Below, piece after piece: positions 1-50,400 of a DNA stretch of 64,000 nt. Numbering within the stretch: position 1 is the first letter of the stretch; each line of letters begins with the position of its first letter. The notes under the pieces were generated by a model that saw nothing but the letters and a program-made list of their open reading frames with translations, was not told the DNA's origin and did not search any database. Both the position numbers and the translations under genes were made by a program. Origin of the DNA: Anthoceros angustus (Eukaryota > Plantae > Anthocerotophyta); assembly GCA_010909165.1 (NCBI GenBank), contig VJWM01000272.1, positions 62,001-126,000 on the forward strand. The letters are read 5' to 3'.

Positions 1-3000
1 GCAATTGAGCCCGGAGATCCCCTATCTCCTTGTCGTGGGCTGCTTCTCCTTGGCATGGCCGCCGCCTCCTCCCGAGGCTCTTCTCCCCGCCTCCGCCTTC
101 AAGCTGGCCTCGGCTTTTCCGGCCGTCTCCCTCCACCGGTTTCGATCACGCCGATAGTGATCCCGGTCGATCTTAGACTTCGCCTCCTCGCCTCCGCCTT
201 CACAGGCCGCCTCCTGCAGGTCTTGGTCGGTCGGCCGCCTCCGCGGTCGCGAGCCTTCTCTGCTTGCGCTCGGGCCTCCTCCGACTCTTTCTGCGCTACC
301 CCTCTCCTCCTGCAGAGGTCTTGACCAGCAGCCTCCTGCACCTTGGTGCTCCTCCGGTGAAGAAACTTAGTCCGTCTGTCGAATGGACTAGACTTCTCTT
401 CGGCCTCCGGCGCTTCCCCTCTTGATGCGGCCGAGCTTCCTTCCTTCGCCTCTGGGCCGCCTCAATGCTCTGGAGGAGCACCATGCGCCTCCTTGTGGCT
501 TCTACCTCACAGGTCTTCTCCATGATTCCACAGGTCCCTAGAGCATACCGTCCATGGCAGTGGCACCCGCCGTGTTTCTTCCACGGCCGCCAGTGAGACC
601 CCAGAAAGTCCGTAGTGGGAGGCGGGCATCTCACGGTCCGCCAAGGTCCATCGCTGGGATCCTCCCGAGTCCGGACTGGGCTCTCGGACCTAATCGGGAC
701 CCTTAGGTCACAGTGGTGAGGTCGAGCTTCACCCTCTTGGCCCTTTTGGCGCGAGCTCCTTTGCCTCTTTCTCCGGGGCTCGGAGGAGGTGAGGGGTCAG
801 GAGCTAGCCCTTTTGCCCCTTCCCGCCTTGAGGGGCTGCGGGACTCGCCCTCTTCCCAGTCCGCCCTCTTCCTCCTTTGGGCGGTTGTAGGCCGCCTCCG
901 CCTCCTTGCGCCTCTTGACCTCTTGCCACTCAGGTGGGTAGGGGTAAGGCAGCACCGTCAGGGTCTTTGCGTTGGTAGCGGTCTTGCGCCTCTTGACTCC
1001 CGAGTCCGGACCTCCTGCTGCGTTGATTGCTCGGAGGAGCACCATGCGCCTCCTTGTTGGCCGCCAACTCTCGCTCGTCGCTCCCTCCTGCTGCGTTGAT
1101 TGCTCGGAGGCACGGGAGAAGGGAAGCGGGATATCTTCCCATACTTCCCTAGGTGGTGAGGGGTCCGCTCGACGTATGGAGTCAGGAATCCTCCCAATCG
1201 TCCTCCTCCGAGTCCGTTTGGCCTTGGGGGTGGCCCCACCTCGGGTGCCCTTGCAGCTCGCTACGGCAAGGCCTCGGTCTTACGCCGCCGCTCGATCTCC
1301 CTCCACCGGTTTCGATCACGCGATAGTGATCCGAGATCACGCCTGTAGATTCCGTTCTCAATTGTAACTTGGGCTGCGGGACTCGCCCTCCTTGCGGTCT
1401 TCCATCTCCGCGTTGCTCAACCTCACGCAATTGAGCCGGAGATCCCTATCTCCTTGTCGTGGGCTGCTTCTCCTTGGCATGGCCGCCCGCCTCCTCGCCT
1501 TCTTCTCGCCTCTGGGCGCCTCGGCTTTTCCGTCTCCCTCCACCGGTTCGATCACGCGATAGTGATCCCGGTCGATCTTAGCGGCTTCGCCTCCTCGCCT
1601 TCACAGGCCGCCCGCCTCTTCCTCCTTTGGGCGGTTGTAGGCCGCCTCCGGTCGCGAGCCTTCTGCTTGCGCTCGGGCCTCCTCCGACTCTTCTGCGCTA
1701 CCCCTCTCCTCCTGCAGGTCTTGACCCGCCTCCTTGCGCCTCTTCCTCCTTTGGGCGGTTGTAGGCCGCCTCCGGTGAAGAAACTTAGTCCGTCTGTCGA
1801 ATGGACTAGACTTCTCTTCGGCCTCCGGCGCTTCCCCTCTTGATGCGGCCGAGCTTCTTCTCGCCTCTGGGCGCCTCCATGCTCACGGAGGAGCACCATG
1901 CGCCTCCTTGTGGCTTCTACCTCACAGGTCTTCTCCATGATTCCAGGTCCCTAGAGCATACCGTCCATGGCAGTGGCGAGCACCCGCCGTGTTTCTTCCA
2001 CGGCCGAGTGAGACCCCAGAAAGTCCGTAGTGGGAGGCGGGCATCTCACGGTCCGCCAAGGTCCTCCATCTCCCTCCTGCTGCGTTGATTGCTCGGGAGT
2101 GGGGTCCGGACTGGGCTCTCGGACCTAATCGGGACCCTTAGGTCACAGTGGTGAGTCGAGCTTCACCCTCTTTGGCCCTTTTGGCGCGAGCTCCTTTGCC
2201 TCTTTCTCACGGGGCTCGGAGGAGGTGAGGGGTCGGAGCTAGCCCTTTTGCCTCTTTCTCCGGGGCTCGGAGGAGGTGAGGGGTCCGCTCGGGCCTCCTG
2301 CTCCTTGAGGGGCTGCGGGACTCGCCCTCCTTGCCTCTTGACCTCTTGCCACTCCGTGGGTAGGGGTAAGGGCACAAGCACCGTCAGGGTCTTTGCGTTG
2401 GTAGCGGTCTTGCGCCTCTTGACTCCCGAGTCCGTTTGGCCTTGGGGTCGGCCCCACCTCGGGTGCCCTTGCCGGCCCTATCTTTCCCTTCGCCTCTGGG
2501 CGCCTCCTTGTTGGCCGCCAACTCTCGCTCCGTCGCTCCCTCCTGCTGCGTTGATTGCTCCGGAGGCACCAGGAGAAGGGAAGCGGGGATATCTTCCCAT
2601 ACTTCCCTAGGTGGTGAGGGGTCCGCTCGGGGCGTATGGAGTCAGGAATCCTCCCAATCGTCCTCCTCCTCCGAGTCCGTTTGGCCTTGGGGTCGGCCCC
2701 ACCTCGGGTGCCCTTGCAGCTCGCTACGGCAAGGCCTCCAGTCCCTTCACGGCGCCGCTCGATCTCCCTCCTGCTCCTTGAGCTCGTAATGTCCCCATAC
2801 ATGGATCGGTATGGGGCGGTCAGATGGCGAGGCTTCTCGTTCCTCGGCTTGCAGGCCTCACAGGCTGAGCAGGCGAAGATAATCCTTCCCCAGTCCGCCC
2901 TCTTCCCCCGCTGTAACGCATGCAGGAACACCAGCAAATTATCACCAAGGTGATCCACCTTGGTGAGCAAGTTCCAATGGACAATAATCAAGACTCGCCC

Positions 3001-4145
3001 CTCTTCCTCCTTTGGGCGGTTGTAGGCCGCCTCAAAACCTCAAGGTCCATCAATCACCCGTTGGTTGTCCTGCGTTCGGGCTTCAACATCGCGCCCTTGC
3101 CGGCCCTATCTTTCCCTTCGCCTTGAGGGGCTGCGGGACTCGCCCTCTTCCTCCTTTGGGCGGTTGTAGGCCGCCTCAAAACCTCAAGGTCCATCGCTGG
3201 GATCCTCCGGAGGTTCTTGGACCGGACCTCCTTGTTGGCCGCCAACATCTTCCGGCGAACTCCGGACCCGGTGACACCGAGCGTCGAACGGCTGGAACAC
3301 GTCCAAATGCCACTCCTCCACCAATTCTCCGCTTCCTCCGGCCATGGCCCAAAGTCCGGATAGCGGGTCACAATGTTGCGCTCTACCGGTTCCATGGCTC
3401 CCAGACCTCCACAGCCTTTTTGGGTGCCATCGCCTTCTTCTCCCTTCGTTCTGGCTTGCGAGGCGGGCGGCACGATCGCCCTCTTCGCGCGTGCTCCAAC
3501 CTTACGCCGCGCGAAGATGCCTGAGCGTTCAAAGAGATGGCGCCAGAGGCGGGTTGCGGAGCGCAAGAGACTGCGAGAATCGCCTCGAGGTCGCGCCGAG
3601 AAATGACCCTCCTCGTCTGCCACGCCGTTGGAGGTAACCGGGAGGAAGGTGCCTCTTCTGTCATGTTGCGCTCTACCGGTTCCATGGCTCCCGGACCTCC
3701 TCGTCGCCACGCCGTTGGAGGTAACCGGGAGGAAGGTGCCTCTTCGCGCGTGCTCCAACCTTACGCGCCGCGCTCTCGGGCGTGAGTACCGCCCTCTTCG
3801 CCGCGCCCTTGCCGGCCCCTACGGTCTGATGCGCATGCCCGTCCACCTCTCAACACCATCACGTGGCGCCCGCCTAACTTACGCTCGAACTTCTAAGTTA
3901 CCTTACTTGGCGTACTTATCCCATTTGCTCCGGAGTGGGGTCCGGACTTACCTGGTCCGTTCTGTGCGCGGTCCGTCCCAACCCTTGGTGTTCAGTTCGT
4001 AGCTCCTCCGGAGTCCTGGGACCTACTCCGGAGTGTAGTCCGGAGTATTCCGGACCTATTCCTTCCTTTCCGCCTTATTTCTACTTCGGACCTATGCAAA
4101 AAAAACAAAACCGACTCATTTCCTAACCCTAAGAAGTCCGTAGTC
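1..4145 (-). mobile_element. Scrambled, GC-rich retroelement-like region made of shuffled repeated segments
   Basis: The same 30-150 bp segments recur in shuffled order, e.g. ctcttcctcctttgggcggttgtaggccgcctc at ~867, 1617, 1740, 3001 and 3145. Minus-strand fragments such as LLVFLHALQRGKRADWGRIIF resemble retroelement accessory ORFs. No RT or integrase motif was seen. Confidence 0.35.
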
Positions 4146-5089
4146 CATGCCTATTTACAGTCCATGTCATTTACGAAGGAACATATTGTATCTCGATTCG
4201 GGCATTTTGTGCTTCGTATGAGGGTTGTGTAGGGGCACATTAGTTGAAGGTGTTCTTCGACATGAATGTGTGGCATCCCTCACTCTATGCAAACATAGGA
4301 GACACGAGTGTATCGGCTAAGCTAGTCAAAGCGGTGGCTGCAAAGGACCGATGCTATGCTCACTACACGCAGCCTTGGAGAGTCTTCGATGGCGCACCAG
4401 CTCGACACTCATTTTAAAGGCCAACATAGAGTATGCAACCGTGGTGAATGGTCATGTCATTTTGGGACAAAAGAGGACCTTGCGAGCTGAGCGAGTTCCA
4501 AGGTTCAAGCTCTCAATCTGTGAATAGTCTTTTCCGCTAGGTGTCCATATTCCGCACATGTAGTTTTTAGCATTACACAAGTAGGATGTTTCTTGCAAAC
4601 TCGAGGTGTACATTATAGGATCAAAATCTAGCGGGAGAAAAGATCTGAAACTTCTACACTATCCCCGCAAGTAGTGCAAGTGAAAGAAGAGCCTATTGTT
4701 GGGAGTACTTATCCTAACCATGGTGTAGAAGCGGGAAAACGAAGAGGTTTGGCGGTGATTGTGAGTATGGAAGTGACAGACTGGAGGAGGCTGTAGGCAG
4801 AGGCGACTTGAAGCTCTTTTGAGACTTTGGCATTTGAATCGATATATTAGTGGACGGTTACGAGAGTGTGAAAGCACGATTTAGGGCGTTGCCAAACTCC
4901 CTACCTAGCTAAGGACGATTGCTTTTTGTGTTGCATCAATGCTCATGGGGGATTGAAGAAGATGGCACAGTACATTCTCATAAGCGGAGCACGGAGAAGC
5001 TATATGTTGATGATGACATCTTGAAGCCCATCTCTGAATCCACATGGATGAGAGACAAGCCCAAGGTGTTTTTGATCAATACTTGTCGA

Positions 5090-5613
5090 GAATCGCCTCG
5101 AGGTCGCGCCAGAAATGACCCTCCTCGTCGCCACGCTTGGAGGTAACCGGGAGGAAGGTGCCTCTTCAGAATCGCCGAGGTCGCATGGCTTACTCGGTCT
5201 TACGCGCGTGCTCCAACCTTACGCGCGTGCTCCAACCTTACGCCGCCGCTCTCGGGCGTGAGTACCGCCTCGTGCCACTGGCCCCTACGGTCTGATGCGC
5301 ATGCCCGTCCACCTCTCAACACCATCCACGTGGCGCCGTCCTGCCTAACTTACGCTCGAACTTCTAAGTTACCTTACTTGGCGTACTTATCCCATTTGCT
5401 CCGGAGTGGGGTCCGGACTTACCTGGTCCGTTCTGTGCGCGGTCCGTCCCAACCCTTGGTGTTCAGTCCGTAGCTCCTCCGGAGTCCTGGGACCTACTCC
5501 GGAGTGTAGTCCGGAGTATTCGGACCTATTCCTTCCGCCTTATTTCTACTTGGACCTATGCAAAAAACAAAACCCGACTCATTTCCTAACCCTAAGGGAA
5601 GTCCGTAGTCCAC
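5090..5613. repeat. Second copy of the element-end segment (matches ~3575-4145), ending ...GTCCGTAGTCCACA at the junction with the COR-tail sequence
   Basis: Direct repeat of 3760-4145. It ends in CA, as LTRs do, immediately before gctatttacagtccatgtc, where homology to the Roco gene at ~22057 starts. Confidence 0.6.
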
Positions 5614-5628
5614 AGCTATTTACAGTCC

Positions 5629-6018
5629 ATGTCATTTCTGAAGGAACATATTGTATCTCAGATTCGGGCATTTTGTGCTTCGTATGAGGGTTGTGTAGGG
5701 GACACATTAGTTGAAGGTGTTCTTCGACATGAATGTGTGGCATCCCTCACTCTATGCAAACATAGGAGACACGAGTGTATCCTGACAGCTAAGCTAGTCA
5801 AAGCGGTGGCTGCTGCAAAGGACCGATGCTATGCTCACTACACGCAGCCTTGGAGAGTCTTCGATGGCGCACCGAGCTCGACACTCATTTTAAAGGCCAA
5901 CATAGAGTATGCAACCGTGGTGAATGGTCATGTCATTTTGGGACAAAAGAGGACCTTGCGAGCTGAGCGAGTTCCAAGGTTCAAGCTCTCAATCTGTGAA
6001 TAGTCTGCTTTCCGCTAG
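5629..6018 (+). CDS. C-terminal COR-region fragment of a TORNADO1-like Roco protein (5'-truncated paralog)
   Basis: MSFLKEHIVSQIRAFCASYEGCVGDTLVEGVLRHECVASLTLCKHRRHECI is nearly identical to the translation at 22071-22230 of the downstream Roco gene. Confidence 0.8.
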
Positions 6019-7082
6019 GTGTCCATATTCCGCACATGTAGTTTTTAGCATTACACAAGTAGGATGTTTCTTGCAAACTCGAGGTGTACATTATAGGATC
6101 AAAATCTAGCGGAGAAAAGATGCTGAAACTTCTACACTATCCCATAAGTAGTGCAAAGAAGAGCCTATTGTTGGGAGTACTTATCCTAACCATGGTGTAG
6201 AAGCGGGAAAACGAAGAGGTTTGGCGTGATTGTGAGTATGGAAGTGGACGGACTGGAGGAGGCTGTAGGCAGAGGCGACTTGAAGCTCTTTTGAGACTTT
6301 GGCATTTGAATCGATATATTAGTGGACGGTTACGAGAGTGTGAAAGCACGATTTAGGGCGTTGCCAAACTCCCTACCCTAGCTAAGGACGATTGCTTTTT
6401 GTGTTGCATCAATGCTCATGGGGGATTGAAGAAGATGGCACAGTACATTCTCATAAGCGGAGCACGGAGAAGTCAGTATGTTGATGATGACATCTTGAAG
6501 CCCATCTCCGAATCCACATGGATGAGAGACAAGCCCAAGGTGTTTTTGATCAATACTTGTCGAGGCCTGGTAGCCTTATCACAAGCGAAGGCTAAGGACT
6601 CTAAAGTTGAGAGTAGCCAAATTGTGAGCAAGAGAGCCGGAGAAGTCCGACTCGATTCGGGCATTTTGTGCTTCGTATGAGGGTTGTGTAGGGGACACAT
6701 TAGTTGAAGGTGTTCTTCGACATGAATGTGTGGCATCCCTCACTCTATGCAAACATAGGAGACACGAGTGTATCACAGCTAAGCTAGTCAAAGCGGTGGC
6801 TGCAAAGGACCGATGCTATGCTCACTACACGCAGCCTTGGAGAGTCTTCGATGGCGCACCAGCTCGACACTCATTTTAAAGGCCAACATAGAGTATGCAA
6901 CCGTGGTGAATGGTCATGTCATTTTGGGACAAAAGAGGACCTTGCGAGCTGAGCGAGTTCCAAGGTTCAAGCTCTCAATCTGTGAATAGTCTGCTTTCCG
7001 CTAGGTGTCCATATTCCGCACATGTAGTTTTTAGCATTACACAAGTAGGATGTTTCTTGCAAACTCGAGGTGTACATTATAG

Positions 7083-7916
7083 GATCAAAATCTAGCGGAG
7101 AAAAGATCTGAAACTTCTACACTATCCCATAAGTAGTGCAAAGAAGAGCCTATTGTTGGGAGTACTTATCCTAACCATGGTGTAGAAGCGGGAAAACGAA
7201 GAGGTTTGGCGTGATTGTGAGTATGGAAGTGGACGGACTGGAGGAGGCTGTAGGCAGAGGCGACTTGAAGCTCTTTTGAGACTTTGGCATTTGAATCGAT
7301 ATATTAGTGGACGGTTACGAGAGTGTGAAAGCACGATTTAGGGCGTTGCCAAACTCCCTACCCTAGCTAAGGACGATTGCTTTTTGTGTTGCATCAATGC
7401 TCATGGGGGATTGAAGAAGATGGCACAGTACATTCTCATAAGCGGAGCACGGAGAAGTCAGTATGTTGATGATGACATCTTGAAGCCCATCTCCGAATCC
7501 ACATGGATGAGAGACAAGCCCAAGGTGTTTTTGATCAATGCTTGTCGAGGCACTGGTAGCCTTATCACAAGCGAGAAGGCTAAGGACTCTAAAGTTGAGA
7601 GTAGCCAAATTGTGAGCAAGAGAGCCGAGAAGTCCGACTCACATTCATGAAAGATTGTCTCATCTTCTTCTCGACAAGTCATGGACAACGATCCTTGAGA
7701 TCTTGAGAAAGGCACATACTTTATCACGGCTTTGATGAAAGCCATCATTCAAGGGTCTCAAGAAGGGATGATGTATGACATTTTAACATCGATTATTGCC
7801 GAGGTCACGAGATAGAAGTCAAGCTCCCAAGTGAAGCGAAGCCGCTCGAGAAGAGATCCCGATGTCCCGAGTTGTACTCCACACTCACAAGAAAGCTTTG
7901 CTGGTCTTTACCATAA
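7083..7916 (+). pseudogene. Additional frameshifted caspase-like copy (p20 + p10)
   Basis: Contains CCINAHGG, KPKVFLINACRGTGSLITSEKAK and FFSTSHGQRSLR. It has many indels relative to the 8650-9501 copy. Confidence 0.75.
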
Positions 7917-8649
7917 GTTCACTCACCGGCCGACGGAGTTCGGTGTGGCCATGTTCCTTCATCCGTAACTGTAATAGAATCATCGTTCCCAACAAGACAC
8001 TAATGGTGCAAGAAATTGCTTCTAATGAGGCCTTCTCATTTGTCCTTTTCTCATTTCTTGCTCGATGGCTCGCACACAATTTGGAGGAGAAACGACTCTT
8101 CCGTGGATGAACCTGTAGGTGAGAGCTCATGGACTTTAGGGAGGAAAGAACAAGGGAGTTATGGAGTCAGTACTCTTTGGTTTCAAGAAGCAAGTCCATG
8201 TCATTCAAGGAACATATTGTATCTCGATTCGGGCATTTTGTGCTTCGTATGAGGGTTGTGTAGGGGCACATTAGTTGAAGGTGTTCTTGACATGAATGTG
8301 GCATCCCTCACTCTATGCAAACATAGGAGACACGAGTGTATCCGACTAAGCTAGTCAAAGCGGTGGCTGCAAAGGACCGATGCTATGCTCACTACACGCA
8401 GCCTTGGAGAGTCTTCGATGGCGCACCAGCTCGACACTCATTTTAAAGGCCAACATAGAGTATGCAACCGTGGTGAATGGTCATGTCATTTTGGGACAAA
8501 AGAGGACCTTGCGAGCTGAGCGAGTTCCAAGGTTCAAGCTCTCAATCCTGTGAATAGTCTTTTCCGCTAGGTGTCCATATTCCGCACATGTAGTTTTTAG
8601 CATTACACAAGTAGGATGTTTCTTGCAAACTCGAGGTGTACATTATAGG

Positions 8650-9501
8650 ATCAAAATCTAGCGGAGAAAAGATCTGAAACTTCTACACTATCCCATAAGT
8701 AGTGCAAGGCGTGAAAGAAGAGCCTATTGTTGGGAGTACTTATCCTAACCATGGTCTAGAAGTAGGAAAACGAAGAGGTTTGGCAATTATTGTGAGTATG
8801 GAAGTGGACAGACCTGGAGGAGCTGTAGACAGAGGGCGACTTGAAGCTCTTTTTGGGACTTTGGCATTTGATACTGATATATTAGTGGACGGTTCTGAGA
8901 GTGTGAAAGCACGATTTAGGAGCGTTGCCAAACTCCCTACCCTAGCTAAGGACGATTGCTTTTTGTGTTGCATCAATGCTCATGGGGGGATTGAAGAAGA
9001 TGGCACACAGTACATTCTCATAAGCGGAGCACGCCGGGAGAAGCTGTATGTTGATGATGACATCTTGAAGCCCATCTCTGAATCCACATGGATGAGAGAC
9101 AAGCCCAAGGTGTTTTTGATCAATACTTGTCGAGAACAGCCTTATCACAAGCGAGAAGGCTAAGGACTCTAAAGTTGAGAGTAGCCAAATTGTGAGCAAG
9201 AGAGCCGGAGAAGTCCGACTCACATTCATGAAAGATTGTCTCATCTTCTTCTCGACAAGTCATGGACAATCCTTGAGATCTTGAGAAAGGCACATACTTT
9301 ATCACAGCTTTGATGAAAGCCATCATTCAAGGGTCTCGAAGAAGGGATGATGTGTACAGCATTTTAACATCAGTTATTGCCGAGGTCACAGAGATAGAAG
9401 TCAAGCTCCCAAGTGAAGCAGGAAGCCGCTCTGAGAAGAGATCCCAGTGTCCCGAGTTGTACTCCACACTCACAAGAAAGCTTTGCTGGTCTTTACCGTA
9501 A
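8650..9501 (+). CDS. Caspase-like cysteine protease domain (clan CD, peptidase C14; p20 + p10), frameshifted in this assembly
   Basis: p20 reads KRRGLAIIVS...DRPGGAVDRGRLEALFGTLAFD...DCFLCCINAHGG...WMRDKPKVFLINTCR. p10 reads KDCLIFFSTSHGQ.SLR...GTYFITALMKAI...DDVYSILTSVIAEV...QCPELYSTLTRKLCW. Motif order and spacing match the caspase fold. Confidence 0.85.
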
Positions 9502-10029
9502 GTTCACTCACCTGGCCGACGGGAGTTCGGTGTGGCCATGTTCCTTCATCCGTAACCAGATTGTAATAGAATCATCGTTCCCAACAAGACACTAATGGTG
9601 CAAGAAATTGCTTCTAATGCGGCCTTCTCATTTGTCTTTTTCTGCTCATTTCTTGCTCAGTGGCTCGCACACAATTTGGAGGAGAAACGACTCCTTCTGT
9701 GGATGAACCTGTAGGTGAGAGCTCATGGACTTTAGGGAGGAAAGAACAAGGGAGTTATGGAGTCAGTACTCTTTGGTTTCAAGAAGCAAGTCCGGATGTA
9801 AGCGTTCCTCGACCGAATGACTTCTAGTCCTTTTGCATATTAGATGTGTGTTCCATCTTCTTGAGCGGCCGGACATGATGTCCCTCATCAAACCGCTGAG
9901 GCTTGCATTTCTTTCACGATGAGAAAACACAAAGCGCGACAAGAGCTCACAGAGTGGTGCCAAACCCTCATCTCCGTGTTAGGGCTATGACATTTTGTTG
10001 TTGAAACTGGATAAGGTTACTTTTCATGC

Positions 10030-11495: not shown

Positions 11496-12625
11496 TTGAG
11501 GTCCTGGACCTTCTGGTGCAGCCAGGGTGGTATGTACACGTCCGCATCTTTCTTCCATCAGGTCATCAAGAGGTGCATTGCACACAAAGATCTGGGTGCT
11601 GGCAGGTGTGCATACCCTGATTGTCAGAAGTGGGTATGTGGCAGCAGATTCTTGGCTAATCACGTCATCCGCGTGTATGCTGCCTATGGGAGGTTGGAGG
11701 ATGCGTTGCAGGTTTTGAATGGATTGGCTGCTCCCAATGCTTATTCGTGGTCCTCCAGAGTTGAGGCACATGTTGACAATGGACAGGCCAGGCAGGCAAT
11801 CGAGATCTATTTGAGGATGGACAGTCATCCCCTATGTTGGCAGATAATCATCTGTTTGTGGCAGCATTTAAGGCTTGTGCCAGTGCAGAAGATCTGACAT
11901 CAGGCAGACAGGTCCATTCCGATGTCCTGAGTAGTGTGCTTGAGCCTGATGTGTTTGTTGGGAGCTGCCTGGTGGAAATGTATGCAAGATGTGGGAGGTT
12001 GGATGATGCTCGCACAATCTTTGACAAGTTGGACTCGAGAAACGTGGTCACATGGAATACGGTGCTTGGAGGGTATGCTCAGGGTGGGCGTGGGCAAGAA
12101 GCCCTTGCGCTCTATGCAAGTATGCAAGAGGAGGAATCCACCTGCCTGACCATGTCACGTTTTGTGCCTCCTCAAAGCATGTGCTAGCAGTGGAACACGA
12201 CACCAGGAAGGCAGCTTCATTCACAAATACAGGAAGCAGGTGTCGGATCTGAGGTGATGGTGGGAGCTGCCTCATAGATATGTATGCAAGATGTGGAAGC
12301 TTGGATGATGCCCGGACTGCCTTTGACAACATGACCAGAAGAAATGTGGTGACCTGGAACGTGATGCTCGCAAGATATGCTGATGGTGGGCTAGGTGAAG
12401 AAGCCCTGTCTCTTTATGCAACTATGCAACAGGAGGGCGTTACTTCAGCAGATCACGTAACTTTGTGTGCCTTCTGAAAGCATGTAAAAGCATCGGGGCA
12501 TTGGAGCAGGGAAGGCAGCTACATGACCAGGTTCAGGAGATGGGCTGCAAGTTGACGTGGTCATTTCGAGCTGCCTGGTGGACATGAATGCAAAGTGTGG
12601 GAGCTGAGAGGATGCCCGCAGGGTG
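11496..12625 (+). pseudogene. PLS-class pentatricopeptide repeat protein, frameshifted and lacking E/DYW domains
   Basis: Motifs include FLANHVIRVYAAYGRLEDALQV, DVFVGSCLVEMYARCGRLDDARTIFDKLDSRNVVTWNTVLGGYAQGGRGQEALALY and MYARCGSLDDARTAFDNMTRRNVVTWN. Confidence 0.85.
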
Positions 12626-13189: not shown

Positions 13190-16100
13190 GAAGTGGAGTG
13201 GGACGCCGTTTGCTCTGCTTGCCTTTTCTTGCAAGTCCTCCTGAGAAGGTGGGACGTTGTTGTGGAGGTTGGGCTATGGCGGATCCATCTCTTCCTGCCG
13301 GCGCCGCTGGTGGACCTGCTCGAGATCCTCGAGTCCCGCTCGCCGCAGCTGCGTGCGTTGCTTGCAGAGCTGGAGTCCGACTCGCCAAAGCGGCAGGAAC
13401 TGCCATCTGTTGATTCGTGGGAAGCTACTTCAATTGCGACTGCCAGGACGGGGAATGTCACCACCGCGAGGAGTGGCACTGGGCGGTGCGCTTGCGTCTG
13501 CTCACCGCTATCGGCAGATGCCGTACGCTCAGGAAGATTCAACTGAATCCTCTGTGGAAGAGGGTCACAGCGTGAGGCGGGACGAGGCGTTGGCGCTCTT
13601 TTCAGGCTTGCAACACAACCTTGTGCTGGAGGAGCTGAATCTGTTTGGCTACAAGGGGTTTGGGACGGCAGCAGCGTGCCTCCAGGCACTGAGTGCCGTC
13701 ATCGACAGAACTCATCGCTCACTGGACTTCCTCGGTCTGCAATCTGTGGGATTGAGTGCAGAAGGACTGGGTGCCATCGCTGCAGCCCTTGGACGCAATG
13801 TCAGCTCTTCAGTGCTGTCCAGATTGTCTCTGTGTGGAACGACATCAGGAATGCTGTCGGGGCGCAACACTTGGCCGACATCCTTACCAAGTCGCCCAAG
13901 CTGCGCAATCTCTGGATGAGCACCATAGGCATGGACGAGGAAGGAGCCGTGGTGATTGCAGGCCCTGGCGCATACCACTACACTGGCTGGGCTTAGAATC
14001 GGAGATCCTGCGCCCCGGAATCCAAACCGGCCCGCGCCCATGTTCCTCGTTCCATTGCTCCAAGCTTTGGTGTGGCACACCCTGGCGGATCCTCCAGCTG
14101 CTGTTTCTGGCAATCACTCCATCACACGGCTTGTCCTTGAGTGTCCGGGAGGCCAGGAGGCTGTGGAGCCGGGGCTGGGAGAAGCCCTGGCTCGGGTGCT
14201 ACGCACCAACCGGGCGCTGAAAGACCTCAGACTATCCAGCTTCTTCATCACACGCGGATTGGGAGCTCTGCGGGAAAACAGCAGCATCACCAAACTCCTG
14301 GTGTTTCACTCGCGGCAGTCGGAGGATGATGACATGGATCCCATCCTGACCACCATCCTGGATGAGTGCAAGACTGTTGAGGAGGTTCAGATCCGGTTTG
14401 ACAAGCCCTTTGGTCCGTCCAGCTTCACCAAGGCGTTTTTCAAGGGTTGCTGCAGAAAACCGCAGCATCAACAGGCTGGTGTTGGATGGCTGGGATGGCT
14501 GGACGACGAGATGTTTGAAGACCTGATTCAATCCCTGTCTACCAACACCAACACCCACCTCAGGCTGGATCACATCTCCATCAAGGGCACCTCATGGGAA
14601 AAGCAAGGCAGGGGCGAACGTCTGGAGAAAGCGTTGGGAGCTGCGCGAGTGCAGCCGCAGCTGCGTGCGTTGCTCGCAGACTTGGAGTCCGAGTCGCCAG
14701 TGCTGCAAGAACTCCCATCTGTGGATTTGTGGGAAGCTATTTCGATTGCCTTTGCCAGGAGGCCTACAGGAGTGTCAACACCGGGGCAGTGGCAGTGGTA
14801 CGTACGCCTGCGCCTGCTCACAGCTATCGGCAAATGCCGGTCGCTGAGGAAGATTCATCTGAATCCTCCGGGGAGGAGGGGCACTTACAGCGTGAGGAGG
14901 TAGAGGCGCTGGCTCTGCTATCAGGCTTGCAACACAACCTTGTGCTGGAGGAGCTGAATCTGTATGGCTACAAGGGGTTTGGGAGGGCACCCTGCCTGCA
15001 GGCATTGACTGGCGTCATGGAGAGATGCTATTTCTCATTGGACTTGCTGGGTCTGCAACATCTGGGATTGAGTGCAGAAGGACTGGGTGTCATCGCTGCA
15101 GCCCTTGGACGCAACCGCAGCTCAGTGCTGTCCAGATTGTCTCTTTGTGGGAACGACATCGGGAATGCTGTCGGGGCGCAACACTTGGCCGACATCCTTA
15201 CCAACTCGCCCAAGCTCCGCAATCTATGGATGAGCAACATAGGCATGAACGAGGAAGGAGCCGTGGTGATTGCACAGGCCCTGGCGCATACCACTACACT
15301 GGCTGGGCTTAGAATCGGAGATCCTGCGCCCCGGAATCCAAACCAGCCCGCGCCCATGTTCCTCGTTCCATTGCTCCAAGCTTTGGTGTGGCACACCCTG
15401 GCGGATCCTCCAGCTGCTGTTTCTGGCAATCACTCCATCACACGGCTTGTCCTCGAGTGTCCGGGAGGCCAGGAGGCTGTGGAGCCGGGGCTGGGAGAAG
15501 CCCTGGCTCAGGTGCTTCGCACCAACCGGGCTCTGAAAGACCTCACACTATCCAGCTTCTTCGTCACACGCGGATTGGGAGCTCTGCGGAAAACAGCAGC
15601 ATCACCAAACTCCTGGTGTTCCACTCGCGGCAGTCGGAGGATGATGACATGGATCCCAACCTGACCGCCATCCTGGATGAGTGCAAGACTGTTGAGGAGG
15701 TGCAGATCCGGTTTGACAAGCCCTTTGGTCCGTCCAGCTTCACCAAGGCGTTTTTCAAGGGTTGCTGCAGAAAACCGCAGCATCAACAGGCTGGTGTTGG
15801 ATGGCTGGGATGGCTGGACGACGAGATGTTTGAAGACCTGATTCAATCCCTGTCTACCAACACCAACACCAACACCCACCTCAGGCTGGATCACATCTCC
15901 ATCAAGGGCACCTCATGGGAAAAGCAAGGCAGGGGCGAACGTCTGGAGAAAGCGTTGGGAGCTGCGCGAGTGCAGCCGCAGCTGCGTGCGTTGCTCGCAG
16001 ACTTGGAGTCCGAGTCGCCAGTGCTGCAAGAACTCCCATCTGTGGATTTGTGGGAAGCTATTTCGATTGCCTTTGCCAGGAGGCCTACAGGAGTGTCAAC

Positions 16101-19100: not shown

Positions 19101-22100
19101 GGCTATCGGAAAATGCCCCACACTCAGATTCATAGATCTCGACCTCTTGGGCGTCGAAATTACAGGGTGACGGTGGCAGAGGCGATGGCGCTGCTAGAAG
19201 GCCTGAGCTCGAATGCAATAGTGGAACGGCTGGACTTGAGTGGCTTCCTTGGTTTTGGAACAGGTGAAGTCTGCGCTGCAATCGCCGCTATCTTGCAATC
19301 CAGCCGCACCTTGCAATTTCTGAATATGGGATACACTGGCATGACTGTCGAAGGACTGGCTTGCATTGCCCTGCTGCGACATAATCGCAGCACTGTGCTT
19401 CGCACCTTGTATCTTTCTGGAAACACGACTGTGGGAGAAGGTGTTGGAGCTCAACACCTGGCTGATATCCTGACCAGCACTCCCGCTCTTCGCAACCTGG
19501 GGATGTGGGATACAGGGATGGATGAGGCGGGAGCATTGATGATAGGGGATGCTCTGGCTCAGAACACCACACTTGACTGGCTGAACATAGGATTCAATCA
19601 AGCGTGGAGGCCAAAGCAGGCAGGGATGATGGCCACGCTGTTAGCTCGAGCATTCACCCTGGCATGCTGGACGCAGACCAGGAGGCTGAAGGTGTTGCTC
19701 CCAAGCTTCCTTCTGTTAACGAGTCTGTCACACATCTCCAGCTGGAAGTATGGGGAGCAGGACAGCAGCCTGTCATCGCTGAGTTGGGAGAAGCTGTGGC
19801 CCGCATGCTGCGGTCGAACATGACTTTAAGGCATCTCGATGTATGTAGCTGCTTTATAAGCCAGGGATTGGAGGGCTGTGTGACAACAGCAGCGTTATCC
19901 GTGTGACAGTCCGACATGGTAGCTCTAGTGCTAAGGAGGACTACTGCAAGCTGATGCCAATACTGCAGAGTTGCCAGACAGTGGAAAAGTTTACAATTAG
20001 CTCAGAACAGTTTGGGACCTTTGGGATCATCCGACCTCCGAAGACGTTTTTCAAATCGTTGCAGGACAATCGTTACCTCAACAGGTTGGTGTTGGATGGC
20101 TGGAAAGGGTTGGACGACAATATGTTCCAAGACCTGTTGCGGGCTCTGCAAGTGAACACCAATTTGAAGAGTATATCGTTCGAGAACACTGTGTGGAAAA
20201 GTCAGGAAAAGGAGCTGCAGTGGATGAACTACTACGCCAAAACAGGGAATACCGGAAAGCTCTGGCAGGGCTCCAACAATGCCAGTGAAATCATGTCGCC
20301 TCGTACTTTGTGGATTTCCATATGCAGGTGAGCCACGTGCTGAACCCAAAGTTTGTACATCCCAAATGGCGTAGTTCGTGGCAGACTTCACTGCAGTTGT
20401 TTCTGTCTTCTACATCTGTTTTCTTGTCTTAACGTTGTTTTCGTCTCCGGAGTGTAATCGGTGGTAAATGTTGCTGTTTCAGGAAAACCACGATACGGAA
20501 TACGTTGATGAGTATGCAAACACACGAAAACGATGTTGAGATGGAGGGTGAAACGATTTCGAAGCACATACCTCGAACCCTTGGGTTTGAGGTTGAGGTG
20601 ATAAAAGATGGTCCAGCCTTGAGAATTACCGTTTGGGATCTTGCAGGGCACCAGGAGTTTCATGCTCTTCACGATTTCGTCTTTCCTGCTGTGAATAACT
20701 CTTCTCTCTTCTTGTTTGTGTATAACCCGTTCAAATTTGGTGGTAATTATTCAAGTGCGGAAATGAAGGATAGAAAGGATTTTCGAGATGAATTTATTTA
20801 TTGGCTTAAATTTATTGCTTCCAACTCACGGTTAGCTCAACAGGTGAAACCTTATGTTCATGTGGTGGTAACATTTGGTGACAAGCTTGAAGGTAGGATG
20901 TCTTGAAGGTTGCAATACGGGAGGAAGTGTTGGTGATGAAGAAAAAGTTCATGGCTGTTGTGGAAACATCCAATGAACCCACTTTCATCAATGGACAGAG
21001 TTGGAAAGATGTGTATGCACTACGCAGCCTTATAGAGGAAAAGCTACGCCAGCTTGTCAGCAAATTGGCCCCAATTCCCAATATTTGTGAGCAGACCCGT
21101 ATACATGTGCAAAGATGGGCTGAGGATCAACAAGGTATGCCAATCATTTCTGTTGAGAAGTTTAGTGAGTTGTTTCATAGCACATGTAAGGCGGCAATAG
21201 GGCATCCACTCATCTCAGAGGATTACAGAAGATTTCTTCGAGACTTCATGGACAAAGAGGATAGCTGGAAAGTAGTAGCATCATATCTCAAGGATTCAGG
21301 GGAGATAATATATTTCCAAATGTCACGGCTTATGGTCATCAACCTCCGATGGTTAGGAATGGGCGTTTTTGGTCAGCTGATTAGTATATTTGGTGAACCG
21401 GACAATAAGCAACATTGGCTTCAAGTTCAAAATGGGTTCATCAGCAAATATAGGTTGAGTAGCCTTCTAAAAATGTCTTTGAACAAGGTAGGGCTTGATG
21501 AAACTATTGTGAGCGAAGAACAATTTATCCAATTGATGCTTGAGTTACACCTTTGCCATGAAAGTAGAGATGAGGAAGGAGAAGTGCGTTATTTTGTTCC
21601 AATATGTATGTATAAAGAAGACGATGGATCAGGAGTTGACCAACAGTTAGTATGGCCTTCACACGGTGGTAATCTTCATGATTATATCTTTATGGGTTTG
21701 CGTCTACAATGCGATGATCAAGATTGTACATTCCTCACACCAGGATTTTTCCCTAGGTTACAGGTTTGTAACTTTTCTCAAGCTCACTATCTTTTGTTTT
21801 ATGTCCTTGGAAACTTCTTCTTTTGTTTTATTATTATTATTTACTGTTAACTAGTCTCATTGTTCCTATATATTGTAGGTACTTTTATACACATATTGTT
21901 TGACAAAAGGCTGGGTTGATGAGGAAAGACCAATTGATTCAGGAATAAAATTGGAGCGTAATGTTCTTTCAATATCTGCAGAGGCATTGGATATCTTTGT
22001 GGAATTTAATGCCGAAATCGGTTGCTACATAGATATACTGGCCCGATCTACTCAAGGCTATTTAGAGTCCATGTCATTTTTGAAGCAACATATTGTATCT

Positions 22101-22700
22101 CAGATTCGGGCATTTTGTGCTTCGTATGAGGGTTGTGCAGGGGTTACATTGGTTGAAGGTGTTCTTCGACATGAATGTGTGGCATCCCTCACTCTATGCA
22201 GACATAGGAGACACGAGTGTATCCCGAGATAAGCTAGTCAAAGCGGTGGCTGCTGCAAAGAATCGATGCTATGCTCACTACACGCACCGGAGAGTCTGAC
22301 GGCAGCACCCAGCTCTACACTCATTTTAAAGGCCAACATAGAGTATGCAACCGTGGTGAATGGTCATGTCATTTTGGGACAAAAAGAGGACCTTGCCAGA
22401 GCCGAAGCAGAGTTCCAAGGTTCGAAGCTCTCAATCCTGTGAATCGTCTGTTTTTCGCTAGGTGTCCATACTCTGCACATGTAGTTTTTCTGTAGCATTA
22501 CACAAGTAGGCCGTTTCTTGCAAACTCTGAGGCTGTACCTGTTGCAGGATCAAAATCTAGCAGCAGAGAAGTTGCTGAGACTTCTATGCAGCTATCCCCG
22601 CAAGTAGTGCAAGGTGTGCAGAAAGAAGAACCTGTTGTTGGGAATAGTTATCCTAACCATGGTGTGGAAGCAGGCAAACGAAGAGGTTTGGCAATAAATT
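13190..22700 (+). CDS. TORNADO1-like Roco protein: RNI-like LRR array - Roc GTPase - COR - start of a caspase domain (multi-exon, frameshifted as assembled; 5' start uncertain)
   Basis: LRR motifs LSRLSLCGNDIG and LRNLWMSNIGMNEEGAVVIAQAL. P-loop CRLVLCGFPYAG|KTT is split by an intron at 20328-20482, and one A must be restored in a homopolymer. G3 reads ITVWDLAGHQEFHALHDFVFP. COR reads LQCDDQDCTFLTPGFFPRLQ|V across an in-frame intron at 21764-21878. These match my recollection of plant TRN1 motifs. Confidence 0.88.
13343..18600 (+). repeat. Four tandem ~1.31-kb LRR-module repeats, followed by a diverged fifth module at ~18960-20280
   Basis: ccgcagctgcgtgcgttgct occurs at 13343, 14655, 15976 and 17281. 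Each unit encodes ALLADLESESP...HNLVLEELNL...LDDEMFEDLIQSL. Confidence 0.9.
22462..22547 (+). other. Predicted 86-bp GT-AG intron joining the COR exon to the caspase exon
   Basis: Donor g|GTGTCC and acceptor TTGCAG|ga. The downstream exon reads openly as GSKSSSREVAETSMQLSPQVVQGVQKEEPVVGNSYPNHGVEAGKRRGLAI. The acceptor is conserved as TAG|ga in the upstream copies. Confidence 0.6.
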
Positions 22701-22970
22701 TATCGAAAATAAATACAAAATAAGCTCAAAAAATGCCAAAATTTTAAGACAAGTGCGCACACTTGTGCGCGCATTTGTCTCAAAAACTTCGATTTTTTTT
22801 TTTGGGACTTTTCGTATTTTTTAGATTTTTTACTTTTTTTTTCCTTGAATGAACCGTCTGGGAATGCACTAGGAGACACGAACCCTATGGGTTCATGCCC
22901 CTAAAGCTTCTTGACCCTACGTGCGTGCACCTAGGCCCCCTTGCCCCCTGGTGTGCACACAAGTACGCGC

Positions 22971-23629
22971 ATCTTCACTTAGGGGTTTTTTCTCTTTTCC
23001 AGATTCTATTATTGCAGGAATTTGCTCGAAAGAAATGTGGAAAATAAGAACCAACCACATTCAACTTTTCAACTTACCGGATATTTGATTATGCTTCATC
23101 AATAGTCTCTAGGGCAGACTCAAAATAGCGTTAATTTTCATTATGCCCTATGTGTAACTCACAACCGTGGCCGGAAATTGGCCCTTAGTGGACTTAAATA
23201 AAATTCTTCTTCTTCTTCTTCTTCTTACATCAAAACTCCGCAGTTAAGCGCCCTTGGGCCGGATTGGTGACCTCCCGGGAAGTCCCGATGCTGCATGCAC
23301 CCTTCGTCTCATCTTTTCTTCCACTCCTTTTTTTTTTTTTCCCCTTCTTCTTCTTCTTTCCATTTTGAGCTCTAGAGTTCTTTGCTTTCCTTTCCCCGAA
23401 TTTTATTGAAGTCCACTAAGAACGGATTTCCTTCATGTGACTCATTTGTGAGTTACAGGCATAATGAGAATTAATCGCTATTCGAGTCGCCTTCAAACTA
23501 GTGTTGTGAAGCATAATCAAATATCTGGCGTTGAAAAATTGAATATGTTGCGTTCTTATTTCCCACAATTTGTTTCAAGCAAACTCCGCAATAATAGGGT
23601 CAAGAATGAGAGAAAACCGGAGTGAAGAT
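22971..23629. repeat. Imperfect inverted repeat (arms ~22971-23206 and ~23398-23629), MITE/foldback-like
   Basis: cttagtggacttaaataaaattc pairs with gaattttattgaagtccactaag. gatatttgattatgcttca pairs with tgaagcataatcaaatatc. atcttcact pairs with agtgaagat. Confidence 0.8.
23228..23302 (+). pseudogene. 5S rRNA-derived fragment (3' two-thirds, with an internal deletion)
   Basis: catcaaaactccgcagttaagcgcccttgggccggattggtgacctcccgggaagtcccgatgctgca matches plant 5S around box A and box C. The 5' part and the AGTACT segment are missing. A T-run follows. Confidence 0.75.
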
Positions 23630-28316: not shown

Positions 28317-28389
28317 TTTCTTGCCCGCCTCCTTCGAGTTCTTCTTTTCGTCCTCTTTGGCTGTCGGAGCTTTCGTCGAGGTGCTGGCT

Positions 28390-49689: not shown

Positions 49690-50400
49690 ACTACTTGGAC
49701 CATGGTCATTCGATTGCATTGCGAACAATGGTCCTTGGTATTCCACATGCCATATATGTCCATCCTGGACCATGGTCATCACACGCGAACAATGGTCCTT
49801 GGGTATCTCGCACCACATATGCATTAACCATCCTTGGACCATGGTCATTGCGAACAATGGTCCTCGTGAAAGATGCTCAACATCGCAACACATATGCATT
49901 AACTTGACCATGCTCGCATGGTCCTTGGTCAAAAGTATTCAACACGCTCGACACATATGCATTAACCATCCTTGGACCATGGTCATTCGATTGCATTAAC
50001 AATGGTCCTTGATCTCGAAAAGTAGTCAACGCTGCTCCACCATATGCATTAACCATCCTTGACCATGGTCATTCCGATTGCATTAACAATGGTCCTTGGA
50101 TCTCGAATAAGTAGTCAACACTTTCCACCACATGCGAACTATTGACCATAAACTCACAAACCAACAACATCCATGGCCCATGGGCATCCGCTGAACAATC
50201 CCTGTCACGAATTATGTCAGATATATGCATATGACATGGTCATTCGATTGCATTGCAACAATGGTCCTTGGATCTCGAATAAGTAGTCAACACTTTCCAC
50301 CACATATGCAAGAACATCCTTGGACCATGGTCTTTTCAACTCACAAACCAACAACATCCATGGCCCATGGGCATCCGCTAAGTTGCCAAATTCGTCCTTG
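49690..50400. repeat. Minisatellite rich in CCATGG/CATATG palindromes
   Basis: Recurring catatgcattaaccatccttggaccatggtcattcgattgcattgcgaacaatggtccttgg variants. The array is mirrored at ~62750-63300. Confidence 0.85.

What the first reader, a model, noticed from the sequence alone, without database searches (positions are those of the whole stretch)
8702..9501. The protease looks like a true Asp-specific caspase, not a plant metacaspase
Seen motifs compared with caspase-3 motifs from memory: DRPGGAVD vs RSGTDVD (first S1 Arg); CCINAHGG vs CVLLSHG (catalytic His); KPKVFLIN(T/A)CRG vs KPKLFIIQACRG (catalytic Cys, with Gln changed to Asn); FFSTSHGQRSLR.LEKGTYFITAL vs [23 protein letters not shown] (second S1 Arg); QCPELYSTLTRKL vs QIPCIVSMLTKEL. 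Established: plant metacaspases have DxCHSG-type motifs and an acidic S1 pocket for Arg/Lys, and land plants are generally held to lack true caspases. Inference: this is an Asp-cleaving enzyme, acquired horizontally or retained from an ancient lineage. Caveat: both p10-bearing copies need a frameshift right after SLR, which is either a systematic error or a real lesion.
Basis: partly seen in the sequence, partly recalled or inferred. Interest (0 to 1): 0.9.

Follow-up and report, generated by a model that had tools for sequence, protein, structure and literature searches.

The report
Dead caspase-type domain copies in a plant
This stretch of a land-plant genome holds a broken, orphaned copy of a protease domain that looks like an animal caspase and not a plant metacaspase; intact relatives sit on immune-receptor-like genes of mosses and liverworts, although plants are usually said to lack caspases.

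Summary
The motifs are real. Window 8702-9501 encodes a Peptidase_C14 domain. Its sequence, and the predicted fold of an intact relative, match animal caspases far better than paracaspases or metacaspases. A family profile hits caspase-6/-8/-3 at about 1e-33 to 1e-29. Structural Z is 29 for caspases, 22.6 for MALT1 and 19 for Arabidopsis metacaspases. Both S1 arginines, the His and the Cys are in place; QACRG reads N(A/T)CRG.

This copy (c4) needs two frame changes: an 8-to-3-nt replacement right after Cys-Arg (9135-9137) and an extra base after SLR (9279, shared with copy c3). It is the last of four tandem 3' fragments (4151-9800), each starting inside the COR domain with no LRR or Roc in front. 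I read it as a pseudogene (about 0.8).

It is not animal contamination. The window carries a PPR-E/E+ gene and a plant HPR2-type ORF. The domain groups (97/99) with Marchantia hydrolase-C14, COR-C14 fragments and C14 ORFs next to NB-ARC-LRR ORFs. Ceratodon purpureus C14-NB-ARC-LRR proteins match the family profile (E 1e-77 and 4e-67).

Asp specificity and origin (transfer or ancient retention) are untested. The scan noted this family before on other DNA of this genome (48 notes).

The parts
4151..5098 (+). Unit U1. It holds a partial COR-B tail, a linker and caspase-type p20 copy c1 (C14 match 4710-5122). It is cut off just after the Cys codon at a microhomology junction (CGAG) with a segment also found at 3574.
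5615..6653 (+). Unit U2. It holds a COR-B tail remnant, a linker and p20 copy c2 (C14 match 6182-6611, in two frames). It ends in the intersubunit linker.
   Evidence: 804 of 805 aligned bases are identical to c3
6651..8197 (+). Unit U3, with full-length copy c3 (p20 plus p10, 7140-7913). It keeps NACRGTG but carries 15 frame-breaking indels relative to c4, and it shares the frameshift after SLR.
8149..8342 (+). COR-B tail remnant of unit U4, matched in two frames at 48-80% to the COR-B ORF at 21900-22229. No Roc or LRR lies in front of it.
8380..8553 (+). Linker exon between COR and caspase. It contains VILGQK, which matches the linker of relative P0012. The stretch 8554-8701 is probably an intron (inferred).
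8702..9134 (+). c4 p20 part, with an open frame. S1 Arg codon 8810-8812, His codon 8981-8983, Cys codon 9128-9130, Arg codon 9131-9133.
   Evidence: 141 bits to the family HMM
9135..9137 (+). Lesion 1. Three bases stand where c3 has eight. The Gly of CRG is lost and the frame shifts by 5 nt. The lesion is unique to c4.
   Evidence: The reads show only the intact form, and only from 96-97% paralogues.
9138..9278 (+). c4 intersubunit linker and start of p10, up to the second S1 Arg (SLR, Arg codon 9276-9278). It has an in-frame 3-nt deletion relative to c3 at about 9268.
9279..9279 (+). Lesion 2. One extra base (or two missing) directly after the SLR Arg codon, in the same context in c3 and c4.
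9280..9501 (+). c4 p10 remainder (LEKGTYFITAL ... QCPELYSTLTRKLCWSLP), ending with the stop codon at 9499-9501.
20505..22229 (+). Roc, COR-A and COR-B ORFs of the neighbouring LRR-Roc-COR gene copy (LRR modules 13.3-20.3 kb). The COR-B tail matches the N-termini of the COR-caspase relatives P0004, P0006 and P0007.
22607..22705 (+). Stub holding the first 33 codons of a caspase exon behind that Roco copy. The rest of the domain is missing.

Best explanation
Window 8702-9501 is copy c4 of a caspase-type (MEROPS C14A-like) protease domain. In intact relatives this domain forms the C-terminal effector of a plant LRR-Roc-COR (Roco) receptor-like protein. Here it is the last of four tandem 3'-end fragments, each made of a COR tail, a linker and a caspase exon. 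The fragments arose by unequal segmental duplication and are decaying. c4 is the best kept copy, but two frame-breaking lesions disable it and it has no LRR or Roc exons in front, so it most likely makes no protease. The family itself is real and plant-borne. The same clade holds a liverwort alpha/beta-hydrolase fusion, COR fusions and C14 ORFs lying beside NB-ARC-LRR ORFs. Annotated C14-NB-ARC-LRR proteins of a moss match the family profile. For intact members I infer a caspase-like mechanism: the receptor scaffold brings two protease domains together, they pair through the last beta-strand, and the His/Cys dyad cuts after an acidic residue held by two arginines. Shown: domain identity, the caspase-like fold of a relative, conserved pocket residues, the fusions and the lesions. 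Inferred: dimer-driven activation, Asp/Glu preference and a role in cell death or immunity.
For: Identity. Pfam Peptidase_C14 matches at E 5.5e-11. phmmer of the p20 ORF against PDB returns 37 sequences, all caspases. The family profile hits caspase-6/-8/-3/-7/-1 over p20 plus p10 at 1e-33 to 1e-29, and the S1 Arg, His, Cys and second Arg are aligned. The Atlas neighbours are caspase-1/-3/-6 clusters by features and caspase-21/-2/-8/-10 clusters by shape.

Fold. The AlphaFold2 model of P0006:173-440 has pLDDT 87.8. The Foldseek top 50 are all caspases. VIA-align gives caspase-9 Z 29.4 (rmsd 1.9, 26% id), caspase-8 29.1 and caspase-3 28.9. It gives MALT1 22.6 (15%), AtMC4 19.0 and AtMC9 18.9 (13%), Yca1 15.9 and TbMCA2 12.8.

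Plant origin. A PPR-E/E+ ORF and an HPR2-type ORF lie in the window. The COR tail is linked to the domain here and in P0004, P0006 and P0007. The domain sits in a clade with 97/99 support together with Marchantia proteins. Ceratodon purpureus KC19_5G008800 and KC19_5G008700 carry the domain in front of NB-ARC-LRR.

Decay. There are four tandem units at 94% identity. Lesions lie at 9135-9137 and 9279. c3 and c4 differ by 15 frame-breaking indels, and substitutions by codon position are 8/14/16. No Roc or LRR lies upstream of the units.

Assembly. c2 and c3 are identical at 804 of 805 bases. Independent contigs support both the c4 state (8815-8941, no gaps) and the c3 state at 8984.

Dimer. The homodimer model scores 0.75 against 0.00 for the best control. 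That mark was reached by 21 of 30 proteins solved as pairs and by 0 of 23 solved as single chains. The runs agree in at least 46% of contacts and the partner's pLDDT is at least 74. The interface is the last strand, 413-423, symmetric at 417-417. The pass may come from memory of solved caspase dimers.
Against: No accurate read of c4 itself was recovered across either lesion. The contigs covering 9130-9140 and 9275-9285 carry the intact form and come from paralogues 3-4% different. A normally intronless PPR gene in the same window is also split over five frames. Earlier notes on this genome suspect assembly indels in other copies. Part of the damage could therefore be artefact. The indel-to-substitution ratio between copies (17 to 38) is unusually high for ordinary decay. 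The fold, dimer and pocket evidence comes from relatives only 39-46% identical to c4, not from c4. The third S1 residue is Asn, not Gln. No enzymology exists for any member. The tree has no metacaspase or paracaspase outgroup.
Confidence: 0.75

Rival explanations
1. c4 is a live caspase-type gene or terminal exon, and its two frame breaks are errors of the assembly.
For: The p20 part is an unbroken 145-codon frame scoring 141 bits. Only two breaks are needed to read the whole domain. Read contigs show in-frame forms at both sites (+G and +TGGT at 9133/9137, and 8 extra bases across 9196-9325). A PPR gene nearby is also frame-split. Earlier notes report RNA reading other copies intact (s1-285826).
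Against: The in-frame contigs differ from c4 by 3-4% in substitutions, so they are paralogues. Lesion 1 is a complex 8-to-3-nt replacement, unlike a simple homopolymer error. Lesion 2 lies in a non-repetitive context and is identical in c3 and c4. c2 and c3 are 804 of 805 identical, and a 351-codon ORF at 28321-29373 is intact, so random indel error is low. The unit starts inside COR-B with no Roc or LRR upstream.
Confidence: 0.13
2. Intact family members have the caspase fold but are not Asp-specific. They might prefer Glu or another residue, or act mainly as non-catalytic scaffolds.
For: Gln of QACRG is Asn in nearly all plant-clade members, which should change the depth of the S1 pocket (inference). 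Several members have lost His, Cys or the second Arg: P0004, P0010, P0014 and Ceratodon P0192.
Against: Both S1 arginines, the His and the Cys are kept together in most members, including Ceratodon P0187, P0005, P0006, P0001, P0009 and the Marchantia proteins. This is the pattern expected of an active enzyme with an acid-binding pocket.
Confidence: 0.3
3. The domain is a divergent metacaspase, paracaspase or orthocaspase with Arg/Lys specificity.
For: All belong to the same Pfam family and clan CD fold. MALT1 and metacaspases are still found at Z 19-23.
Against: No meta- or paracaspase is among the 37 PDB sequence hits of the p20 ORF, the best 60 profile hits, or the 14 named among the 43 library hits. 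Identity to them is 13-15%, against 24-30% to caspases. The S1 positions are basic, not acidic, and the motif is NACRG, not DxCHSG.
Confidence: 0.03
4. The caspase-like stretch is animal DNA joined to plant DNA by misassembly or contamination.
For: The nearest characterised relatives are animal caspases.
Against: The copies are embedded between plant-type genes: PPR-E/E+, HPR2-type and LRR-Roc-COR. Each unit carries the COR tail of the neighbouring Roco gene. The closest relatives are plant-clade proteins, including chromosome-scale Marchantia and Ceratodon records, and they stand apart from the animal sequences in the tree.
Confidence: 0.01

Closest known systems
Metazoan caspases (MEROPS subfamily C14A; caspase-3/-6/-8/-9)
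   Same: Same fold with p20 and p10 parts and a disordered linker. His/Cys dyad in SHG- and ACRG-type motifs. Both S1 arginines are kept. Best sequence and structure matches. A predicted dimer through the last strand.
   Different: Gln of QACRG is Asn. There is no CARD or DED prodomain. The domain is fused in cis to Roco, NB-ARC-LRR or alpha/beta-hydrolase modules. It is found in bryophyte-grade plants. Only 24-30% identity. Activity is untested, and the window copy is broken.
Ceratodon purpureus KC19_5G008800 and KC19_5G008700, and Marchantia polymorpha Mp6g00900 / MARPO_0108s0037 ('Caspase family p20 domain-containing protein')
   Same: Same plant clade or family and the same motifs: R-x-G-x-x-x-D, AHG, NACRG, S-x-R, and Q-C-P...L-x-W at the end.
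   Different: These are intact annotated genes with other partners: the domain is N-terminal to NB-ARC-LRR in the moss and C-terminal to an alpha/beta-hydrolase in the liverwort. Here it follows LRR-Roc-COR and is decayed. Identity to c4 is 32-40%.
Plant metacaspases (C14B; AtMC4, AtMC9)
   Same: Clan CD fold and a His/Cys dyad. They are the accepted plant members of family C14.
   Different: Z 19 against 29 and 13% identity. By established knowledge they have an acidic S1 pocket for Arg/Lys and a DxCHSG-type motif. By established knowledge they act without caspase-type dimerisation.
Paracaspase MALT1
   Same: Caspase-like domain activated by dimerisation on an immune signalling scaffold. It is the next-best structural match (Z 22.6).
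   Different: 15% identity. Arg-specific with an acidic S1 pocket (established knowledge).
Roco proteins (plant TORNADO1, LRRK2, bacterial Roco)
   Same: The LRR-Roc-COR order lies upstream of the domain (weak Pfam hits), and the COR tail is conserved with relatives.
   Different: Known Roco output domains are kinases or are absent. A caspase output was not found in the papers searched. Kinship to TORNADO1 itself was not tested here.

Membership tests
Caspases (C14A) | Clan CD caspase fold with p20 and p10 parts | tested here: met
   Tested on relative P0006:173-440 (39% identical to c4 p20). The model has pLDDT 87.8. It matches caspase-9/-8/-3 at Z 29, rmsd 1.8-2.3, over 213-218 residues. c4 itself was not folded because it is broken.
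Caspases (C14A) | Catalytic His and Cys in the conserved motifs | tested here: met
   c4 has His at 8981-8983 (NAHGG) and Cys at 9128-9130 (NTCR), both aligned to the caspase-2 His and Cys. The Gly after Cys-Arg is lost in c4.
Caspases (C14A) | S1 pocket of two Arg plus Gln | tested here: inconclusive
   The first Arg (8810-8812) and the second Arg (9276-9278) align to the caspase S1 arginines. Gln is Asn in c4 and in most of the plant clade. The geometry was not measured.
Caspases (C14A) | Closer to caspases than to paracaspases, metacaspases or orthocaspases | tested here: met
   A rooted phylogeny with outgroups was not possible.
Caspases (C14A) | Cleavage after Asp | not testable with these tools
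   Needs enzymology on an intact member.
Caspases (C14A) | Dimer through the last beta-strand | tested here: inconclusive
   The relative's homodimer model scores 0.75 against 0.00 for the best control, with a symmetric interface at 413-423. The pass may reflect memory of solved caspase dimers.
Caspases (C14A) | Uninterrupted coding sequence (a functional gene) | tested here: not met
   c4 is read in three frames with breaks at 9135-9137 and 9279. c1 to c3 are worse.
Metacaspases (C14B) | Acidic S1 pocket and a DxCHSG-type Cys motif | tested here: not met
   The S1 positions are Arg and the motif is N(A/T)CRG. Metacaspases give Z 12.8-19.0 at 13-19% identity.
Roco proteins | Roc GTPase followed by COR | tested here: inconclusive
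   Roc E 7.5e-5 and COR-A E 1.9e-5 in the neighbouring copy, both below the Pfam cut-offs. Only a COR-B tail remnant precedes c4.

The most novel reading that the evidence does not exclude
Bryophyte-grade land plants (liverworts, mosses and the deep-branching plant sequenced here) keep a clade of true caspases, with a basic, acid-binding S1 pocket and dimer-driven activation. These are built directly into NLR, Roco and hydrolase receptors as one-chain sensor-executioner proteins. If so, 'plants have only metacaspases' holds for vascular plants only, and receptor-coupled caspase signalling is not an animal invention.
Probability: 0.45. Interest if true: 0.85.

Novelty: new variant of a known kind. 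Interest (0 to 1): 0.6.

Why it matters
Recent papers still state that plants lack caspases and use metacaspases instead (for example PMC12521494, found). Decades of 'caspase-like activity' in plants have been assigned to unrelated proteases. A plant-borne clade that resembles animal caspases in sequence, in fold and in the two S1 arginines is therefore notable. So is its fusion in cis to NB-ARC-LRR, LRR-Roc-COR or hydrolase modules. It gives a directly testable candidate for receptor-coupled proteolytic cell death in early-diverging land plants, and intact genes are available in two laboratory models, Marchantia polymorpha and Ceratodon purpureus. The copy in this window adds no function of its own. 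Its value is that it documents the Roco-linked architecture and the rapid birth and death of these genes.

Tried and rejected
1. The search for homologous proteins with the 153-aa p20 ORF found nothing. Its length window hides fusions, so this says little.
2. The genome-contig scan with the plant-family alignment gave 39 pattern matches, none confirmed. The wider alignment had no stretch conserved enough to search with. tblastn of P0005 against plasmids found no match. So I found no bacterial relative, but the sensitivity was low and this is not evidence against a bacterial origin.
3. Reads. Only two small runs of one sample hold parts of the stretch (shares 0.22 and 0.09). Their short contigs come from many paralogues and do not resolve c4 at either lesion. 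Whether X1 is RNA is a guess, so I make no claim about expression.
4. I first took the GAGAA in c1 as sharing c4's lesion 1. Direct reading showed it is a duplication junction with the 3574-type segment, so I withdrew that.
5. The tree has no metacaspase or paracaspase outgroup, because no tool gave such sequences. It shows only that the plant clade is separate from the sampled animal caspases. It does not show who is ancestral.
6. No gasdermin-like ORF was seen near the copies in this window. This was not a systematic test.
7. Six paper searches and four papers searched by term found no description of caspase-type domains in bryophytes or of Roco-caspase fusions. The library is incomplete.
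8. The identity of the organism (hornwort, according to earlier notes) was not verified. The HPR2-type ORF is about equally distant (52-58%) from all listed land-plant lineages.

Full report
**What is there.** The window is nuclear DNA of a land plant. It carries a PPR gene with E and E+ motifs (25.8-28.3 kb). It also carries an ORF at 28321-29373 that is 52-58% identical to HPR2/hydroxyphenylpyruvate reductases of angiosperms, a gymnosperm, a fern, a lycophyte and mosses alike. It further holds a chain of LRR, Roc and COR ORFs at 13-22.2 kb. The reported stretch, 8702-9501, lies in the last of four tandem units: U1 4151-5098, U2 5615-6653, U3 6651-8197 and U4 8193-9800. The units are about 94% alike. 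Each consists of the tail of the COR-B domain, a short linker exon, a probable intron and a caspase-like exon. U1 and U2 are cut short inside the domain. U3 and U4 run past the stop codon. A fifth, 33-codon stub of the same exon follows the COR ORFs at 22607-22705.

**Check of the observation.** All five motif blocks are present. Pfam Peptidase_C14 matches the 153-aa ORF 8702-9163 at E 5.5e-11. A family HMM built without the window gives 141 bits for the p20 part. It also finds the rest of the domain in two further frames. In c4 the sequence after Cys-Arg reads Glu and then leaves the frame, because three bases (9135-9137) stand where c3 has eight. GQRSLR is the c3 form; c4 has an in-frame 3-nt deletion there. 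The extra base after the SLR arginine (9279) is identical in c3 and c4.

**Caspase or metacaspase.**
- phmmer of the c4 p20 ORF against all PDB sequences returns 37 sequences, and every one is a caspase. The first S1 Arg, the His and the Cys are aligned.
- An exhaustive search of 1.84 billion representative proteins gives only 43 hits at E 0.001 or better, with the best at 43-48% identity.
- The named hits are Marchantia polymorpha and M. paleacea alpha/beta-hydrolase-C14 proteins and animal caspases. No metacaspase appears.
- A profile of eleven plant-type members hits caspase-6, -8, -3, -7 and -1 over the full p20 plus p10 length at 1e-33 to 1e-29. The second S1 Arg is also aligned.
- An AlphaFold2 model of the intact relative P0006:173-440 has pLDDT 87.8 and pTM 0.87.
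- The Foldseek top 50 are all caspases.
- Against 48,161 PDB representatives the order of matches is as follows:

| Chain | Z | identity |
|---|---|---|
| caspase-9 | 29.4 (rmsd 1.9) | 26% |
| caspase-8 | 29.1 | 30% |
| caspase-3 | 28.9 | 30% |
| insect caspase-1, caspase-4, CED-3, Dronc, c-FLIP | 26-23 | 19-25% |
| MALT1 | 22.6 | 15% |
| AtMC4 / AtMC9 | 19.0 / 18.9 | 13% |
| legumain | 17.9 | 10% |
| Yca1 | 15.9 | 19% |
| TbMCA2 | 12.8 | 13% |

- The Atlas neighbours by features and by shape are again animal caspase clusters.
- Most plant-clade members keep R-x-G-x-x-x-D, AHG, KPK-x-F-x-x-N-A-C-R-G and S-x-R together. The Gln of QACRG is Asn.

Specificity for Asp remains an inference from two arginines.

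**The family in plants.**
- In an unrooted maximum-likelihood tree the c4 p20 lies in a clade with 97/99 support. That clade holds the Marchantia proteins, COR-linked fragments (P0004, P0006) and ORFs that sit directly upstream of NB-ARC-LRR ORFs on metagenome and Logan contigs (P0001, P0005). P0002 lies upstream of split NB-ARC and LRR ORFs. The animal sequences fall elsewhere.
- The N-termini of P0004, P0006 and P0007 match the COR-B tail at 21951-22223. The Roco-caspase junction is therefore conserved in other organisms.
- The NB-ARC-LRR ORF next to P0005 is 74% identical to Ceratodon purpureus KC19_5G008800 (1147 aa) and 64% identical to KC19_5G008700 (1508 aa). UniProt names the latter 'Caspase family p20 domain-containing protein'. 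Both carry the domain at the N-terminus.
- The first Ceratodon protein keeps all catalytic and pocket residues. The second has lost them.

The domain thus occurs in liverworts, in mosses and in this deep-branching plant, on three different receptor-like scaffolds. No named vascular-plant protein appeared. I found no bacterial relative, but those searches were weak. Whether the clade is an ancient retention or an early transfer stays open.

**State of the copy.**
- c4 reads in frame 2 for 8702-9134, in frame 0 for 9138-9278 and in frame 1 for 9280-9501.
- c3 differs from c4 by 15 frame-breaking indels in about 800 nt. Most of these are shared with c1 and c2.
- Substitutions between c3 and c4 fall 8/14/16 on codon positions 1/2/3. 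That gives no sign of purifying selection.
- No Roc or LRR sequence precedes any of the four units. Each begins about halfway through COR-B.

**Could the breaks be assembly errors?**

Against that view:
- c2 and c3 are identical at 804 of 805 bases.
- A 351-codon ORF nearby is intact.
- Independent contigs support the c4 state without gaps over 8815-8941, and the c3 state at 8984.
- Lesion 1 is a complex replacement, and lesion 2 sits in a non-repetitive context shared by two copies.

For that view:
- The only contigs across the two lesion sites carry in-frame forms. They differ from c4 by 3-4%, so they come from paralogues.
- A PPR gene in the window is also split over five frames.
- The indel-to-substitution ratio between copies is high.
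- Earlier notes on this genome suspect assembly indels at other copies.

I put about 0.8 on c4 being a real pseudogene. Either way it is an orphan fragment.

**How intact members probably work (inference).** The LRR part senses. Roc-COR or NB-ARC switches and oligomerises. The caspase domains are brought together and pair through their last strand. A homodimer model of P0006:173-440 scores 0.75 against 0.00 for the best of three controls. That mark was reached by 21 of 30 proteins solved as pairs and by 0 of 23 solved as single chains. The runs agree in at least 46% of contacts, and the partner's pLDDT is at least 74. The interface is residues 413-423, symmetric at 417-417. The pass may come from memory of solved caspase dimers, so it shows likeness only. 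The active dyad would then cut after an acidic residue. The smaller Asn in place of Gln might loosen the preference for Asp over Glu (speculation). Several members have lost catalytic residues, as in animal c-FLIP-like decoys.

**Novelty.** Six full-text searches and four papers searched by term found no description of caspase-type domains in bryophytes or of a Roco-caspase fusion. A 2025 paper still states that plants lack caspases. Public records of Marchantia and Ceratodon already carry automatic 'caspase p20' names, so the sequences are not new to databases. The scan has noted this family repeatedly on other DNA of this genome (48 notes). Some of those copies were reported beside gasdermin-like genes. 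I did not see such a gene in this window.

**Verdict.** It is not supported as to function of this copy. It is untested as to Asp specificity and origin.

Noticed in passing
window 13257-22232 (+): An LRR-Roc-COR gene copy with four 1.3-kb LRR super-modules (13.9-18.5 kb, 72-100% alike). Successive modules match each other in different frames, so this copy also looks frame-broken. Its caspase exon stops after 33 codons at 22705.
   Followed up: partly
window 22971-23206 and 23398-23629: An inverted repeat (75%, about 240 nt arms) lies just behind the truncated caspase stub. It may be an inserted element that removed the rest of the exon.
   Followed up: no
window 25836-28316 (+): A PPR gene with E and E+ motifs is split over five overlapping ORFs in different frames. 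Its last ORF ends 4 nt before the HPR2-type ORF starts. It is either a pseudogene or a sign of assembly indels.
   Followed up: partly
window 28321-29376 (+): An intronless 351-codon 2-hydroxyacid dehydrogenase (HPR2/HPPR type) in a 62% GC patch. It is 52-58% identical to the listed named land-plant proteins and 74% identical to one unnamed Logan protein. It may be a retrocopy.
   Followed up: partly
window 11496-12620 (+): A further PPR-like fragment with an internal 300-nt repeat (11946-12314 against 12249-12618, 70%).
   Followed up: no
window 35354-36088 (+): An ORF with a strong DUF7869 match (E 3.4e-46). Other 1.17-kb direct repeats lie at 29.5-32.5 kb and 33.1-34.5 kb. Their nature was not examined.
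   Followed up: no
window 1-4150: A 63% GC region with a 1.4-kb direct repeat (1-1304 against 1427-2771, 83%) and strong AT skew. It has no Roc, COR or C14 match and no Pfam hit on its two long minus-strand ORFs.
   Followed up: partly
window 49931-50135 and 62797-63297: Tandem arrays of an 82-95-nt unit. The two sites carry reverse-complement versions of the same unit.
   Followed up: no
window 4371-9800: Lesions are shared among the four copies in a mosaic way. The p20 indels are shared by c1, c2 and c3, and the SLR frameshift by c3 and c4. The indel-to-substitution ratio is unusually high (17 to 38 between c3 and c4). This suggests unequal crossing-over or gene conversion among the tandem units.
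   Followed up: partly
relatives P0004, P0010, P0014 and P0192 (Ceratodon KC19_5G008700): Members of the plant clade that have lost the catalytic His, the Cys or the second S1 Arg. They may be pseudo-protease decoys alongside active-looking paralogues.
   Followed up: partly
L001 1855-8365 and the 30.7-kb contig of JGI sample 3300059835: On moss-like contigs, a second C14 ORF (275 aa) lies about 2 kb behind a C14-NB-ARC-LRR gene. These genes therefore also occur in tandem there.
   Followed up: no
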